64,000 nucleotides of DNA from Macrostomum lignano (Eukaryota). This document shows positions 7,470-27,598 of this stretch, in pieces. The translations under genes and the position numbers were made by a program. The stretch covers positions 62,001 through 126,000 of the forward strand of contig NIVC01001960.1 of the NCBI GenBank assembly GCA_002269645.1, given 5' to 3'. How positions within the stretch are numbered: the stretch's first letter is position 1; every line of letters starts with the position of its first letter. Under the pieces are notes generated by a model. That model was not told where the DNA came from, ran no database searches, and was given only the letters and a program-made list of their open reading frames with translations.

Positions 7470-8314
7470 CTATTGGCGCTGCTCTGGCTGCTGCCTGGAG
7501 AATGCCTTTCTGACGTAGTGCTGAAACACACGGCTGAGGCACCAGTACAGGAACGGGCAGAGAGCGCTGTGCAGGTAGATCAGGGCCTGACTGTACGGGT
7601 AAATCTCTATCAGGGGGCTCACGGCGTCCACGCCACGGTTTTCCAGCACAAAATCCTGCAACAGAATGATCAGATCTTTGGGGAACCAGCACACGATGAA
7701 GACAGCCACCAGTACGGCGAGAGTTTTCACCGTCCGACGGTGCAGCCGGCGCGTCTGCTGGTGCTGCCGATTCAGCGGCCCGCCAGATGCTACGGAAGTC
7801 TGGTTGGTCAGGGCCAGGCGTGGCTGCTGCTCCTGGAGCTCTTCTGGCTGTTCCTCCAGCGCGGCGGTCGCTTGTCCGAGAGACGTCGCCGCCTGCAGCC
7901 GGCGGCCGGTCAAGCGGCCGAACTGTCTGGACAAGAATCGAGCGGTGACGCCGTATGAGAAAGCCAGCACCACGCAGGGAGACAGGAACAGCAGCACTAG
8001 GAAGTAGGCTGAGTAGGCCTTCTGCCCCACCGGGTTGCTGCGATCCTCCGAGCACACGTAGTGAACGTCTTGGCTGCGGGACGAGTTGCCGCGGCCGTCA
8101 CCTCCTACCGGCATGTTCACCGGCTGCAGACTGAAGGCGAACAGGGCTGGCGTGGAGACCAGCAGGGCGCCAAGCCACGTGGCTGCCACCACCCGGCGCA
8201 GGTTGGAGTTGTTGCTCACCTGGTCCGGCGGCGGCGCCGCTGTAGTGGCGCTCTGACGGGCGCGCAAAATTGCAATGGACGCCAGGGAGAAACTGTTAAC
8301 GCACAGGGCCAGGC
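7470..8314 (-). CDS. Class A peptide-type GPCR, exon 3 (end of TM3 to TM7 and C-tail)
   Basis: Acceptor actccgcag|GC. Translation GLALCVNSFSLASIAILRAR..VVAATWLGALLVSTP..C..YFLVLLFLSPCVVLAFSY..KTLAVLVAVFIVCWFP..LHSALCPFLYWCLS, ending in a stop codon. Confidence 0.92.
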
Positions 8315-9084
8315 CTGCGGAGTCAGTTGGGGGGGGATTATGTTTGCTCCGTGATTTTGGCCAAGGATTTTTTTAAGTAGTCCATGACTCTAAGCAGATG
8401 TCTATTAGATGGACAAGGGCCAATCTCCAAAGTAAATTGTGCACAGTTACAAGAATTCAAGCTACTTAATAGCAAGTAGTAATAAAGCATTTCAATTGGA
8501 CTGTACGAGTTCTATGCCATATTGCCTGGGAAGTTTTTGATATGATATAAGAAAGTCGAGCAGCTAGTCGCTTCCATTCTCAAGGGAAGCAAACACTGTC
8601 TGACCACTCAGACACGAACTTTGCTCTCCCCCTACTCCTCAACCTGCAGCTCAATATGCCCTGAGACGGAATTCCTGAGCTGCGGACGGTCTTCAGCTGT
8701 CAGCTCAGATCTCTGCCTCTGCCGCTGAACCGAGAAATTACTTCTTATCTATGATGAACTTCCAATTTGATCAGCCTGACCCCTGGCTGCTTATATCGCT
8801 CCAACCCGACACCGCCGCATCCCCAAATCAGCGGGATTTCCTTCCTTCGCGTTTCTGTCTGATAGGGAATAGTTTCCCCTTTTCTAACAGCGGAAGAAGG
8901 GATCTCGAAGCACTCACCCCTGCCTTCGGGAGCTTCGATCTTCTCTTCAATTCTCTTGCGGCCAATAGTTGAGGCTGTTAAAATATGCACAAAAATATGC
9001 GCTAAGCGGAGCTCTGGGGATGAGGAAAATCCCAAACTTCAAGAAGTCGAATCTCCCACGCATTGTCAAGATGCAGAATCCTAT

Positions 9085-9417
9085 ACAGTCAGGGTGCAGA
9101 ATCCCAAACAGTCAGGGTGCTGAATCCCAAACAGTCAGGGTGCTGAATCCCAAACAGTCAGGATGCTGAATCCCAAACAGTCAGGATGCTGAATCCCAAA
9201 CAGTCAGGATGCTGAATCCCAAACAGTCAGGATGCTGAATCCCAAACAGTCAGGATGCTGAATCCCAAACAGTCAGGATGCTGAATCCCAAACAGTCAGG
9301 ATGCTGAATCCCAAACAGTCAGGATGCATCCTGACTCACACTGTGTCAGGATGCAGAATGACACACACACACTGTGTTAGGATGCAGAATCCCACACACT
9401 GTGTCAGTGTGCAGAAT

Positions 9418-9464
<47 letters not shown>

Positions 9465-24573: not shown

Positions 24574-25569
24574 GAATAAGCCTAAAGATAGGAATAAGAG
24601 TGCAGGTAACAGTCCCAGCTCAGCTCATCTTGACGGGATTAATAGAGCAGAGCCGAAAGTCTGCCTGGGGCTGAAATAAGAGATTTCACATTTCATTTCT
24701 TATTTGGCAGCTGCTCAGTGATTTGATCAAGTCGCGTCCAGGATCGTGGGTCTGTTCCTAGCTGATAGCAAATGCCGTTCACTTTTACTCTTTCTGATTG
24801 AAAATTTATTGCAAAACAATCACCTGTCGCACTTTCAAGCACACAGATTGCGTACTTTTTATACACAGTGTGTCAAAGTGAACCATGATTTCAATAGCAT
24901 CGGCGCCAGCGACAGGGGCCAATGAAAGTTACCGCTGCACCTGCAGGTTGAAGGTTGAATTTCAGTTAAAATATGTTGAATTGAATTACGAGTAGTTTAT
25001 AAAAACATCGTCTGGAAGCTGGTAAAGTGAAAGTACTGAATGCTCTTTATAGAACTTTTGTCGAATGCATGGCATCAAAATTTGAGTTTTACCGCAGACA
25101 TGAAAAATCTATCTTGAAAAAAGACAGTCTCCAGGCGTTTCAGTGCGTTTGACAAGTCTCCAGTAGCATTTCTCTTGATTTTTTAGTCGCTAAACTGATG
25201 AAGCCACCTTGGACCAGACTCATACATGTACTGTATGCGCTAGCTTCATGTGATCGCCGTAATAGCATTTCAGAAGGGTAATAGCATAAAAATCGTCCAT
25301 TAAGTGCTTTAAAATGTAGGTTTTCTCTCTCGTTATTGTATTTGTAAGCAACGCGAATGCTACGTCCTTACGCACCCAGGACGTCTAGCGATCCTTGGAC
25401 ATTGACAGTTGAAATTGATGGCCTATTGCAGCTAAAACGCTCTCAGTACTACTTAGAAGACTGAGTACTGCAAGGCAACTTGTTATTACGCCGGCTGTCC
25501 GGAAAGTCGTGAGAATGTATCTTAAAAAAGCAGTCAGAACTGTCGGAAAATACAGTAACAGTACTAGTT

Positions 25570-26050
25570 GGTAATATGATCTCCCGCCCCTTGTGTTGAT
25601 TACAGCTTGGCAATGGTCAACGAGTCGCTGAACCTCTCTTTTCAAGCAATCTTCGTCAAGGCCCTCTTGCCCACTGCAACGCAGCTTCTCGAACTTCCTT
25701 GTGGTCGCTGAATGTGGTCGATGATCCCCTTGGCTAAGCCAGCACCTGTTTTTTACTTTGTGCCAGTGTCGTTCAGGTGCACCCATGTCTCATCTTCCAC
25801 CTCTTACTTGTCAAAAAAGTTTTTTCCATGCCCTCGTTGTAAAAAAGCCTGCGAACTTTTTCTCCTCGGAGAGAGCGTGCGGAACCCAGACAGCAGAAAC
25901 TTTTTGAAGGTGCAAATTCTCCGTCAAAATTTTGTGCACTGTTGTTCTTCTAAATTCCAAAAATTCAACGAGGTCCCTGATATAAACCTTTGAATCCTCT
26001 TCAACAAGAGCTCCGAGGAGCTGAGGCCAGGGGAACTGCTTCATCACGGA
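25570..26050 (-). mobile_element. Internally deleted, degenerate mariner transposase remnant
   Basis: LVEEDSKVYIRDL..TTVHKILTENLHLQKVSAVWVPHAL (HTH and WVPHxL motif), then DETWVH and a C-terminal QRLVDHCQAVINTRG. Stops and frameshifts are present. Confidence 0.85.
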
Positions 26051-27142
26051 ACTCTAAGTACCATCTGTAAACCGTTGACTGACTGGTGCCGCAACTCCAA
26101 AAACTTTGAGTAGCTCGTCATGACAACTGATAACGCAGATTCCAGGACTGTATCTAGCATTGGCATAAGTCTAGAAGTCTTCCATTTTGAAGAAATGCCT
26201 GTCAAAATTTGCAATCTTGATCACTGCGTTGCGTTGGTTATTGAGCGCATAGAGCATGGTGTGAGCCTTATATTGCCCGCTATTCCAAGCAGTTAGTCAA
26301 GTTGTGAGCTTCATTTTTCAACTAATTGTCTATGGGATATACGAGCATCGTATATAAATGCTCTATATGAGGTAAAGCACGCTATTTTCCGGGCACTTTT
26401 TTACGCTCGCGTTTTTTCCCATGCGAGGCTTGTGGGGGGAATTGCTGACATGTCAAGGCTTACAAGGGCCTGCTGAGGTATATTGCAAAGAGACGCAACA
26501 TGTAGTTTATTAAAAAACTTGTACTGCATTATGGCTCCCCAACGGGGGCGCTGATTGCTAGTATGAGTCTAATATTGAAATTATCTGTGCACCATGTCAA
26601 CAGCTTGCTTCTTTCTTGCTCGATTGACACATTCTCACGAATTTCCGGACAGCCGGCGCGCGTGTCCTTGGGTTTGTGGGTTTCGCGGAGTATTTCCGTT
26701 TTGTAATTATCTTTCAGAAGAACAATTGTAAAAATAAGTGTCGAACACATTTGGTTGAGTACAGCTGCGTCAGTCGGAACTGAAGTAATTCGTGCTGTAG
26801 TTGTGAACGTATATTTGCAAAGAAGGTTTGTCAAGACAAAGACGCACAATCGGCGATGTCTGCTTCTCGTCATCGGCGGCCCAATGTGCTTTGTAACAAC
26901 TCGCAAAACTACCCTTAGTACCCTGATCTTTTTCTAGCGTAATCTAAAGTATTTTGTACCTGTCCGCCATTATTTGTGATGGGTACCTGCTAGGATCCTC
27001 TGGATGGCCAGTAGCAAACTTGCTGAGGATTTCTTTCCAGCTATTAATAAGCCCGACGGCAAAATAGCGGACCCAAAGTGAATGTGATAAAATGAATTCT
27101 TCATCCAGTCAGACGAGATGCCCCTGGACCCAGTTGGCCGGC

Positions 27143-27598
27143 TTAAGTGCGCCTACCGCCTCGCGACAGCAGCAGGTTGACAACCCGAGCCTCAGTCGGT
27201 TGCCACAAATGTCGCTGTCGCATCAGCCGCTGCCGCCGCGGATTATCAAGCAGACGCTGGGCCAGCTGGACCACTGCGCTTCGAAGCTGTTGATATTCCC
27301 GACGACTCACTGATGGCGTGCCAGCTTCGGGACTCATGCCAACCTCGTCGACGTCGTGGTCGACGTAGTAGTGGGCAAAGCGGACAGCGGCTAGGCGTTT
27401 GCCGATGGCCGGATAGCCGGAAGTCATATCGAAGTCCGCCGACCGAAGCGACAGGCCGGGCCCGTCATCCCAGGATCGGCGAGTGGCGTCGATCGTCGAA
27501 TCAGCGTTGACGCCAGCGACAGCGGAGCAGATCAGCAGGGCCAGGTAGCTGACAGTCAGGATGGCGGACGATGAGGCAACGGCAGAGACTGGGTGCAT
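27143..27598 (-). CDS. Candidate secreted neuropeptide precursor (151 aa)
   Basis: ATG at 27598 is followed by a hydrophobic signal (AILTVSYLALLICSAVAGVNA). Dibasic RR sites and two amidation-type sites are present (GYPAI-GKR, LLLSRG-GRR), with GC-rich exon-like codons. A possible 5' UTR intron spans 27616-27786. Confidence 0.65.
   Translation of the reverse strand: MHPVSAVASSSAILTVSYLALLICSAVAGVNADSTIDATRRSWDDGPGLSLRSADFDMTSGYPAIGKRLAAVRFAHYYVDHDVDEVGMSPEAGTPSVSRREYQQLRSAVVQLAQRLLDNPRRQRLMRQRHLWQPTEARVVNLLLSRGGRRT

What the first reader, a model, noticed from the sequence alone, without database searches (positions are those of the whole stretch)
7470..27598. Candidate amidated neuropeptide precursor directly upstream of a peptide-type GPCR on the same strand
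Seen: an unannotated-looking 151-aa ORF (27598 to 27143) with a signal peptide and the layout DSTIDAT-RR-SWDDGPGLSLRSADFDMTSGYPAI-G-KR ... RR-EYQQLRSAVVQLAQRLLDNP-RR-QRLMRQRHLWQPTEARVVNLLLSRG-G-RR-T*. The next gene I could identify downstream is a class A receptor whose TM2-TM3 pattern (LP..W.LG...CRLV.F..G) fits peptide receptors. Known: G-KR and G-RR mark prohormone-convertase cleavage plus PAM amidation. Inference: this may be a genomically linked ligand-receptor pair, which is uncommon in animals. I cannot assign the peptides to a family; the WQP motif gives only a weak, unverified resemblance to NKY-type peptides.
Basis: partly seen in the sequence, partly recalled or inferred. Interest (0 to 1): 0.75.

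Follow-up and report, generated by a model that had tools for sequence, protein, structure and literature searches.

The report
Orphan flatworm propeptide gene beside GPCR
A small secreted protein gene of the flatworm Macrostomum lignano looks like a lineage-specific neuropeptide precursor and lies 13 kb upstream of an unusual peptide-type receptor gene, but nothing beyond adjacency links the two.

Summary
ORF 27598..27143 (-) encodes the 151-aa protein exactly as quoted. The next recognisable gene downstream on the same strand is a two-exon class A GPCR (13859..13565 and 8314..7470).

The window is Macrostomum lignano scaffold NIVC01001960.1 (Mlig_3_7). The ORF is not unannotated: it is a GenBank "hypothetical protein" in the BOX15_Mlig032804 series, present in six near-identical assembly copies. 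One copy's gene model has a spliced 5' exon.

Several features fit a prohormone: a signal-peptide-like N-terminus, no Cys after the signal peptide, five dibasic sites, two Gly-dibasic amidation signals (one C-terminal) and no predicted fold. However, no homologue was found outside M. lignano in 1.84 billion representative proteins, and no motif match appeared among planarian prohormones or in the literature. Conservation is therefore untested and the peptide family is unassigned. The NKY idea fails.

The receptor is most similar to CCK, NPFF, QRFP and orexin receptors. It carries non-canonical switches (N2.50, LRA for DRY, CPFLY for NPxxY), shared with a 63%-identical paralogue.

About 10 kb of the 13.3-kb spacer is satellite DNA. 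Ligand-receptor pairing rests on adjacency alone. A UniProt model fusing the ORF to receptor exon 2 is probably a predictor artefact.

Verdict: a plausible orphan propeptide gene, with the pairing unsupported.

The parts
27787..27887 (-). 5' non-coding exon of the propeptide gene (5' limit approximate). It contains a short uORF and ends at the donor CACCAC C|GTAAGT.
   Evidence: The GenBank CDS model of copy L003 (P0003) spans 469 nt for a 98-aa product, which implies a ~172-nt intron. Its peptide ...GLGHH|QVIAQVMHPVS maps across this junction in the window.
27616..27786 (-). 171-nt intron in the 5' region (GTAAGT ... TCCAG).
   Evidence: for coordinates. The same acceptor is used by the UniProt model P0005.
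27143..27598 (-). CDS of the 151-aa candidate pre-propeptide (stop TAA at 27145..27143).
   Evidence: The exact product is annotated on three contigs of GCA_002269645.1.
27503..27598 (-). Predicted signal peptide, aa 1-32 (MHPVS...AVAGVNA|DS).
   Evidence: Kyte-Doolittle maximum of 2.2 over aa 16-30, with V at -3 and A at -1. AF2 predicts a helix at 7-31. SignalP was not available.
27395..27475 (-). Predicted peptide 1 with its amidation and cleavage signal: SWDDGPGLSLRSADFDMTSGYPAI-G-KR (aa 42-68), preceded by RR (aa 40-41).
   Evidence: Processing is inferred and was not observed.
27299..27394 (-). Acidic spacer LAAVRFAHYYVDHDVDEVGMSPEAGTPSVS-RR (aa 69-100). It contains a GTGAGT at 27310 and the GG at which copies L001 and L002 read one G fewer.
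27149..27298 (-). C-terminal basic, helical region. EYQQLRSAVVQLAQRLLDNP-RR is followed by QRLMRQRHLWQPTEARVVNLLLSRG-G-RR (aa 101-150). It would give one long or two or three shorter peptides, the last one amidated.
   Evidence: AF2 predicts helices at 99-117, 120-128 and 134-146, at pLDDT 47-62.
26506..26511 (-). First AATAAA after the stop (634 nt downstream); the likely 3' end of the propeptide mRNA.
   Evidence: This is a sequence motif only.
16215..24517 (.). 32-bp satellite, 253 copies, filling most of the spacer between the two genes.
   Evidence: The array is shorter in other assembly copies.
13919..15651 (.). 22-bp satellite, 78 copies, immediately upstream of the receptor gene.
13565..13889 (-). 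Receptor exon 1. The ATG is at 13859, and TM1 to the first half of TM3 follow. The 30 nt upstream (13889..13860, PDGNLSQHQL) are homologous to the paralogue's N-terminus and follow a strong acceptor, ccccgccag|.
   Evidence: Pfam 7tm_1 positions 1-80.
8315..13564 (-). Receptor intron (5.25 kb), mostly tandem repeats (9065-11265 and 12015-13476).
7470..8314 (-). Receptor exon 2. It runs from the second half of TM3 (IAILRARQ in place of DRY) through TM7 (CPFLY in place of NPxxY) to the stop.
   Evidence: Pfam 7tm_1 positions 96-260.

Best explanation
Two separate genes lie on the minus strand of a Macrostomum lignano scaffold.

(1) A small spliced gene (transcript cluster Mlig032804) encodes a 151-aa secreted protein that has no Cys after its signal peptide and no predicted fold. 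It has the anatomy of a prohormone. After signal-peptide removal, prohormone convertase would cut at RR41, KR68, RR100, RR122 and RR150, with carboxypeptidase trimming. PHM/PAL would then convert Gly66 and Gly148 to C-terminal amides. The expected products are SWDDGPGLSLRSADFDMTSGYPAI-NH2 and (pQ)RLMRQRHLWQPTEARVVNLLLSRG-NH2 (or its 18-mer HLWQP...RG-NH2), plus non-amidated spacer peptides. It is most likely a lineage-restricted orphan neuropeptide or peptide-hormone precursor.

(2) A two-exon class A receptor of the CCK/NPFF/QRFP/orexin branch lies 13.3 kb downstream, with non-canonical activation switches.

The adjacency is most likely coincidental.

Shown: the sequence features, the spliced gene model, the annotation status, the receptor class and motifs, and the satellite spacer. 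Inferred: secretion, processing, amidation, neuronal expression and function.
For: ORF sequence and layout. The open frame exceeds shuffles (P=0.004), G-dibasic motifs are enriched (P=0.013, or 0.0009 with one C-terminal), and the N-terminus has a hydrophobic core obeying the -3/-1 rule. Codon-position GC pattern and a GC peak over the flanks. The exact product is an annotated gene on three Mlig_3_7 contigs. That annotation is transcriptome-based, by my own knowledge of Wudarski 2017 and Grudniewska 2018 as cited in PMC8629364; I did not verify it here. The GenBank model of copy L003 is spliced in the 5' region. AF2 gives no globular fold (pLDDT 42), only helices. [quoted passage not shown] Receptor: Pfam 7tm_1, in-frame splice, best solved-structure matches CCK-A/NPFF2/QRFP/orexin. 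A 63%-identical paralogue keeps the same unusual motifs, arguing for a maintained gene. Frameshifted ORF copies lie on indel-rich contigs (29-64 gaps per 7.4 kb) while intact copies lie on clean contigs (0-4 gaps), so the frameshifts are probably assembly errors.
Against: No homologue was found outside M. lignano: phmmer against 1.84e9 representatives and a word-indexed search of 5.8e9 proteins. Conservation of the peptides and cleavage sites is therefore unshown. There is no Pfam family, no motif match among the Schmidtea prohormone sequences held in the supplementary files of Collins 2010, and no match in full-text literature. Arg is 12% of the protein (18 of 151), so some RR pairs are expected by chance. 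The statistics are post hoc on an ORF picked for these very features. L001 and L002 share the same 1-bp difference that truncates the product after peptide 1, which could be a real allele. No expression pattern or peptidomic data could be retrieved.
Confidence: 0.55

Rival explanations
1. The propeptide and the downstream GPCR are a cognate ligand-receptor pair kept in linkage. They might even be co-transcribed and resolved by SL trans-splicing.
For: The two genes are on the same strand with no other recognisable gene between them. The arrangement is kept in all assembly copies that reach that far. The receptor is peptide-type. Receptor homology extends 10 codons upstream of its ATG to a strong acceptor at which the M. 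lignano spliced leader, which ends in ATG, would supply an in-frame start. Repeats are known to inflate operon spacers in this species (PMC8629364).
Against: Adjacency is the only link. The copies are >=98.8% identical duplicates or haplotypes, so the shared synteny is not independent evidence. After removing satellites, about 2.5 kb still separates the polyA signal from the receptor acceptor, above the 1-kb operon criterion of PMC8629364. The acceptor CGCCAG does not match the reported trans-splice motif [T/C]TNCAG. No gene is called over receptor exon 1 in the NCBI annotation. The peptides do not resemble known ligands of this receptor branch (own knowledge). With roughly 100 precursor loci and hundreds of peptide GPCR loci among tens of thousands of genes, about one chance adjacency is expected (rough own estimate).
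Confidence: 0.07
2. The ORF encodes a small, fast-evolving secreted protein that is not a neuropeptide precursor, such as a gland or seminal-fluid product. The dibasic and Gly-dibasic motifs are then a by-product of an Arg-rich composition.
For: The protein is lineage-restricted with no homologues. It is Arg-rich, with 18 of 151 residues. M. lignano expresses many taxon-restricted secreted reproductive proteins (PMC5977470 and PMC7336406, titles and abstracts).
Against: Two G-dibasic motifs with one at the extreme C-terminus are rare in composition-matched shuffles (0.09%). The absence of Cys after the signal peptide, the lack of a fold and the small size fit prohormones better.
Confidence: 0.25
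3. The ORF is not a functional coding sequence. It would be a chance open frame in a transcribed non-coding or decaying locus.
For: Three of the six assembly copies carry frameshifts, and two share the same one. There is no cross-species conservation. The ATG-ORF length is only marginally unusual for this GC-rich stretch (P=0.05).
Against: The 232-codon open frame has P=0.004. The GC1/2/3 pattern is coding-like. Frameshifts track contig indel density. Three copies encode an identical intact product.
Confidence: 0.1
4. The ORF and receptor exon 2 belong to one gene, as in UniProt A0A1I8IKR7. That 699-aa model runs a gag-like part, then ORF residues 1-148, then the receptor from mid-TM3.
For: The model exists, and its junction SRGG|LALCVN is in phase with the receptor exon 2 acceptor.
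Against: The model's N-terminus maps to a repeat at only 72% identity. Its donor G|GTAGG does not fit the species consensus GT[G/A]AG. It skips receptor exon 1, so the product would lack TM1 to mid-TM3. The accession series appears to be an ab initio WormBase ParaSite import (own knowledge). The NCBI models end the ORF at its stop codon.
Confidence: 0.02

Closest known systems
Flatworm neuropeptide precursors (npp/spp genes of Schmidtea mediterranea and other Platyhelminthes; Collins et al. 2010, PMC2953531)
   Same: Small secreted precursors with a signal peptide, dibasic cleavage sites and Gly amidation donors. They are often taxon-restricted and recognised only by this anatomy.
   Different: No sequence or motif match to any Schmidtea prohormone in the supplement searched. 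The peptides here are single-copy, whereas many npp/spp precursors carry repeated peptides. No peptidomic or expression evidence is available for this gene.
CCK / NPFF / QRFP / orexin-type class A peptide receptors
   Same: These are the receptor's best solved-structure matches (E 4e-21 to 2e-17). The receptor has the 7TM layout, the C3.25-ECL2 cysteine pair, CWxP and R3.50.
   Different: The receptor has N in place of D2.50, LRA in place of D/ERY, and CPFLY in place of NPxxY. Identity to the best non-Macrostomum hit is about 23%. No orthologue was identified, so it cannot be assigned to any one of these receptor families.
NKY / NPY-NPF family peptides
   Same: Only a WQP tripeptide and the presence of a long C-terminal amidated peptide.
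   Different: The family is defined by a C-terminal R-[FY]-amide (own knowledge). Here the C-termini are -AI-amide and -RG-amide, so the defining feature is not met.
SL-resolved operons of M. lignano (PMC8629364)
   Same: Same-strand neighbours. The downstream gene has a candidate outron acceptor where the SL's terminal ATG would be in frame. The spacer is inflated by repeats.
   Different: The repeat-adjusted spacer is about 2.5 kb, above the 1-kb criterion. The acceptor does not match the reported motif. SL reads could not be examined.

Membership tests
Neuropeptide / peptide-hormone precursor (generic definition) | N-terminal signal peptide | tested here: met
   The hydrophobic core covers aa 11-30 (Kyte-Doolittle up to 2.2), with VNA|D obeying the -3/-1 rule. 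AF2 predicts a helix at 7-31. This is heuristic only; SignalP was not available.
Neuropeptide / peptide-hormone precursor (generic definition) | Mono- or dibasic convertase sites flanking the peptides, with Gly amidation donors | tested here: met
   There are five dibasic sites, two preceded by Gly and one of those C-terminal. This is rarer than composition predicts.
Neuropeptide / peptide-hormone precursor (generic definition) | Mature peptides and cleavage sites conserved in related species | tested here: inconclusive
   No homologue was found outside M. lignano. Other Macrostomum genomes and transcriptomes may not be in the libraries. The assembly copies are too similar to be informative.
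Neuropeptide / peptide-hormone precursor (generic definition) | Expression in neurons or endocrine cells, and detection of the processed amidated peptides | not testable with these tools
   No expression or peptidomic data could be retrieved.
NKY / NPY-NPF peptides | C-terminal Arg-Phe/Tyr-amide on a ~36-40-aa peptide | tested here: not met
   The predicted C-termini are ...YPAI-NH2 and ...LSRG-NH2.
Class A (rhodopsin-like) GPCR, peptide-receptor branch | 7tm_1 domain above the Pfam gathering score, with best similarity to peptide receptors | tested here: met
   7tm_1 scores 40.1 and 68.7 bits on the two exons against a cut-off of 30.5. CCK-A, NPFF2, QRFP and orexin receptors are the top matches.
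Class A (rhodopsin-like) GPCR, peptide-receptor branch | Canonical microswitches D2.50, D/E-R-Y and N-P-x-x-Y | tested here: not met
   Alignment to CCKAR and NPFFR2 gives SLACS-N-LL, IAI-LRA-RQ and SAL-CPFLY. R3.50 and CWFP are retained. The paralogue has the same N2.50 and LRA, but its models stop before TM6.
Class A (rhodopsin-like) GPCR, peptide-receptor branch | Conserved TM3-ECL2 disulfide cysteines | tested here: met
   TAC(91)RLV and YVC(186)SED are present and align with the CCKAR and NPFFR2 cysteines.
Cognate, genomically linked ligand-receptor pair | Peptide activates the receptor; linkage conserved across species | not testable with these tools
   Only adjacency within one species' near-identical assembly copies is available.
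M. lignano SL-resolved operon (PMC8629364 criteria) | Repeat-adjusted intergenic distance under 1 kb and a downstream gene that is SL trans-spliced | tested here: not met
   About 2.5 kb remains after subtracting the two satellites. The acceptor is CGCCAG against the motif [T/C]TNCAG.
CRF/DH44/ELH-type or PDF-type long helical amidated peptides | Family-specific sequence signature and a class B receptor | not tested
   This is only a resemblance recalled from memory (LRxxxxxLxQRLL...; RVVNLLLS against PDF's ELINSLLS). No profile was available, and phmmer found nothing.

The most novel reading that the evidence does not exclude
The 151-aa protein is a Macrostomum-specific neuropeptide precursor whose amidated peptides are the ligands of the adjacent, microswitch-divergent (N2.50 / LRA / CPFLY) class A receptor. 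That would make a physically linked, co-evolving ligand-receptor pair in an animal genome, possibly co-regulated through a repeat-inflated transcription unit with an SL-donated start codon for the receptor.
Probability: 0.06. Interest if true: 0.7.

Novelty: new member of a known kind. Interest (0 to 1): 0.35.

Why it matters
If the prediction holds, it adds an orphan peptide family to the poorly charted neuropeptidome of an early-branching flatworm model that has transgenesis. That would supply two synthesisable amidated peptides and one nearby orphan receptor to test. The receptor is also of some interest on its own, because two paralogues keep R3.50 and CWxP but have replaced D2.50, D3.49/Y3.51 and N7.49. 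This raises the question of how, or whether, it couples to G proteins. The practical lessons are narrower. Public models of this locus are inconsistent: three are frameshifted, one is a chimera fused to half a receptor, and the receptor is missing from the NCBI annotation. Adjacency in a satellite-rich, duplicated assembly is weak evidence for function.

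Tried and rejected
(1) Homology of the ORF. Pfam gave nothing. The word-indexed search of 5.8e9 proteins found only M. lignano copies. Full phmmer against 1.84e9 representatives found only M. lignano.

(2) Literature and planarian prohormone supplement searches for GYPAIG, LLLSRGG, DFDMTSG, HLWQPTE, IGKR, RGGR, WQP and similar strings gave no relevant match. 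The key flatworm neuropeptide papers (McVeigh 2009 and 2012) are not held.

(3) Expression look-ups for Mlig032804 in full text and in the supplements of two M. lignano RNA-seq papers found nothing.

(4) Paralogue and allele comparison for selection was rejected as uninformative. All six copies are >=98.8% identical, flanks included.

(5) The paralogous receptor locus, needed to ask whether it also has an upstream propeptide, is not on record.

(6) The receptor family could not be refined. The word prefilter returned only the paralogue, a fish NPFF-receptor-like protein at 23% identity, and a GPR37-like protein.

(7) The fused UniProt model was considered and rejected, because of its weak donor, the skipped exon 1 and its repeat-derived N-terminus.

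(8) AF2 on the single sequence gave low confidence as expected. It is useful only in showing no globular fold.

(9) Resemblances to orcokinin/pedal peptide (FDxxxSG[FY]), CRF/DH44/ELH and PDF were recalled from memory. They are too weak to claim.

Full report
**Identity of the window.** The 151-aa ORF matches only Macrostomum lignano proteins. The window is 100% identical over 7.4 kb to locus L004, which is scaffold NIVC01001960.1 of GCA_002269645.1, the Mlig_3_7 assembly. This is therefore flatworm nuclear DNA, rich in satellites.

**Check of the observation.** Translating 27598..27143 (-) reproduces the quoted protein and layout exactly. The frame is open for 232 codons, which only 0.4% of dinucleotide-preserving shuffles of the same stretch reach. 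The 151-codon ATG-ORF is reached by 4.9%. GC is 0.69/0.51/0.68 at codon positions 1/2/3, against 0.44-0.50 in the flanks, which is a coding-like pattern.

- The N-terminus has a 19-20-residue hydrophobic core and a VNA|DS site obeying the -3/-1 rule.
- The rest of the protein has no Cys and carries five dibasic sites.
- Two of these sites are preceded by Gly, and one lies three residues from the stop. Composition-matched shuffles give two or more G-dibasic motifs in 1.3% of cases, and also one at the C-terminus in 0.09%. These figures are post hoc.
- AlphaFold2 on the single sequence finds no fold (mean pLDDT 42), only helices at 7-31, 63-80, 99-117, 120-128 and 134-146.

**The ORF is already annotated.** Its exact product is a called gene on three Mlig_3_7 contigs. 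Three further copies are "hypothetical protein BOX15_Mlig032804g3/g6/g4" with truncated products. Aligning the DNA shows that those three differ from the window by single-base indels at different places, and L001 and L002 share one of them. All six loci are at least 98.8% identical, flanks included.

The frameshifted copies lie on contigs with 29-64 gap positions per 7.4 kb relative to the window. The intact copies lie on contigs with 0-4. I therefore read the frameshifts as long-read assembly errors, although the shared one could be a real allele. Because the copies are so similar, they say nothing about selection.

**Gene structure.** The GenBank CDS model of copy L003 spans 469 nt for 98 residues, which implies a ~172-nt intron. 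Its peptide ...GLGHH|QVIAQVMHPVS maps in the window to a 5' exon ending at 27787 (C|GTAAGT) and an acceptor at 27615 (tccag|AAGTG), 17 nt before the ATG. In the window the upstream frame is closed by stops, so 27598 is the start codon. The first AATAAA lies 634 nt after the stop. The Mlig_3_7 annotation is, to my knowledge, transcriptome-based. If so, this model is indirect evidence for a spliced mRNA. I could not see reads.

**Which peptides?** Dibasic cleavage plus amidation predicts three products:

- SWDDGPGLSLRSADFDMTSGYPAI-NH2
- the non-amidated EYQQLRSAVVQLAQRLLDNP
- QRLMRQRHLWQPTEARVVNLLLSRG-NH2, possibly with an N-terminal pyroGlu

Its 18-mer HLWQP...RG-NH2 needs cleavage at R129, which has R at P3 and P6 and is plausible. 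This reasoning is inference from standard convertase rules. A PC2 homologue is expressed throughout the M. lignano nervous system (PMC12435804), so the processing machinery exists.

**Family assignment fails.** Several searches gave nothing:

- no Pfam hit
- no homologue outside M. lignano in 1.84 billion representative proteins read in full by phmmer
- none in the word-indexed 5.8-billion set
- no match of the peptide motifs in full-text literature
- no match in the Schmidtea prohormone supplement of Collins et al. 2010

The NKY/NPY idea fails its defining feature, a C-terminal R-F/Y-amide. I noted weak, memory-based resemblances to orcokinin/pedal peptides for peptide 1, and to CRF/DH44/ELH or PDF for the helical C-terminal part. 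They are leads only. If either of the latter held, the expected receptor would be class B, not the neighbour.

**The receptor.** Two ORFs carry Pfam 7tm_1. They join in frame at FIEG|gtgaat (13565) and ccgcag|GC CTG (8314), giving 379 aa. The 5.25-kb intron is mostly tandem repeats. Its best solved-structure relatives are CCK-A (4e-21), NPFF2, CCK-B, QRFP and orexin receptors, so "peptide-type class A" is supported.

The alignments show unusual switches: N for D2.50 (SLACSNLL), LRA for D/ERY (IAILRARQ) and CPFLY for NPxxY. R3.50, CWFP and the TM3-ECL2 cysteines are kept. A 63%-identical M. lignano paralogue shares N2.50 and LRA, which argues for a maintained gene rather than a pseudogene. Outside Macrostomum the best hit was a fish NPFF-receptor-like protein at 23% identity, so no orthology can be claimed.

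Homology to the paralogue runs 10-11 codons upstream of ATG 13859, without an in-frame ATG, up to a strong acceptor at 13889. The M. lignano spliced leader ends in ATG (PMC8629364). Trans-splicing at that acceptor would therefore give an in-frame MPDGNLSQHQL... N-terminus with an N-glycosylation site. This is inference. No gene is called over receptor exon 1 in three other copies of the locus in the NCBI annotation.

**Between the genes.** The 13.3 kb from stop to ATG contains a 32-bp satellite of 253 copies (16215-24517) and a 22-bp satellite (13919-15651). It also holds two ORFs without Pfam hits. The spacing is 6-8 kb in other copies because the arrays differ in length. "Next gene downstream" is therefore right, and "directly upstream" is generous.

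**Is it a ligand-receptor pair?** Nothing but adjacency supports this.

- The synteny seen in other assembly copies is not independent evidence.
- After removing the satellites, about 2.5 kb remains between the polyA signal and the receptor acceptor, above the 1-kb operon criterion for this species. The acceptor also does not fit the reported trans-splice motif.
- The peptides do not look like ligands of the CCK/NPFF/QRFP/orexin branch.
- A chance adjacency of one precursor gene and one peptide GPCR somewhere in a genome of this size is not improbable (rough own estimate).

I put the pairing at about 6-7%.

**The fused model.** UniProt A0A1I8IKR7 (699 aa) strings together a repeat-derived gag-like part, ORF residues 1-148 and the receptor from mid-TM3. 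Its N-terminus matches the window at only 72%. Its donor G|GTAGG departs from the species consensus, and it skips receptor exon 1. I regard it as a prediction artefact.

**Verdict.** The ORF is a credible but unproven lineage-restricted propeptide gene, already deposited as a hypothetical protein. It sits next to a divergent orphan peptide-type receptor, and a functional link is unsupported. The finding is a new member of a known kind and of modest interest. The receptor's altered switches and the possible SL-donated start codon are the more unusual details.

Noticed in passing
window 7470-8314 and 13565-13859 (-): The GPCR has N at 2.50, LRA in place of D/ERY, and CPFLY in place of NPxxY, while keeping R3.50, CWFP and the TM3-ECL2 cysteines. 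A 63%-identical M. lignano paralogue (UniProt A0A1I8GA70 group) shares N2.50 and LRA.
   Followed up: partly
window 13860-13889 (-): Ten codons upstream of the receptor ATG are homologous to the paralogue's N-terminus. They follow a strong acceptor and have no in-frame ATG. The ATG-terminated M. lignano spliced leader would supply an in-frame start there, giving MPDGNLSQHQL... with an NLS glycosylation site.
   Followed up: partly
window 16215-24517 and 13919-15651: A very regular 32-bp satellite (253 copies, 96% matches) and a 22-bp satellite fill the spacer. ORF-to-receptor distance is 13.3 kb here but about 6-8 kb in other assembly copies (L002, L003, L005), so array length is polymorphic or mis-assembled.
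   Followed up: partly
L001, L002, L003 compared with window 27143-27598: Three GenBank models of the same gene (BOX15_Mlig032804g3/g6/g4) are truncated by single-base indels. These copies lie on indel-rich contigs, and L001 and L002 share the same missing G (GCTGGCACG read as GCTGCACG).
   Followed up: yes
window 27151 to 8314 (-); UniProt A0A1I8IKR7: A public 699-aa model fuses a repeat-derived N-terminus, the propeptide ORF and receptor exon 2. It is named a GPCR-domain protein and is probably chimeric.
   Followed up: yes
window 29350-30589 (-): Overlapping ORFs encode a basic, gag-like protein that is 72% identical to the N-terminal part of A0A1I8IKR7. It has no Pfam hit and is probably a dispersed repeat or transposon-derived gene.
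   Followed up: partly
window 25385-25786 (-): An ORF ending ...VDHCQAVINTRGGRSYYQ recalls the C-terminal end of Tc1-like transposases (from memory). It has no Pfam hit and may be a degraded transposon between the propeptide gene and the satellite.
   Followed up: no
window 35039-38274 (+): A CDC14-like dual-specificity phosphatase (DSPn and DSPc exons) is transcribed divergently from the propeptide gene. A 32-bp tandem array (36752-37228) sits in its intron.
   Followed up: partly
window ~48500-55300 (+): Exons encode an SH2 domain (53425-53946) and a PTB domain (54819-55304), a tensin-like C-terminus. Upstream lie low-complexity exons, including a His-rich HSHDHSHD run (50380-51021). The introns hold 41-bp, 18-bp and 16-bp satellites.
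   Followed up: partly
window 27787-27887 (-): The 5' non-coding exon of the propeptide gene contains a short upstream ORF (MSEPSNNYCLSGSLEIQSALRF*).
   Followed up: no
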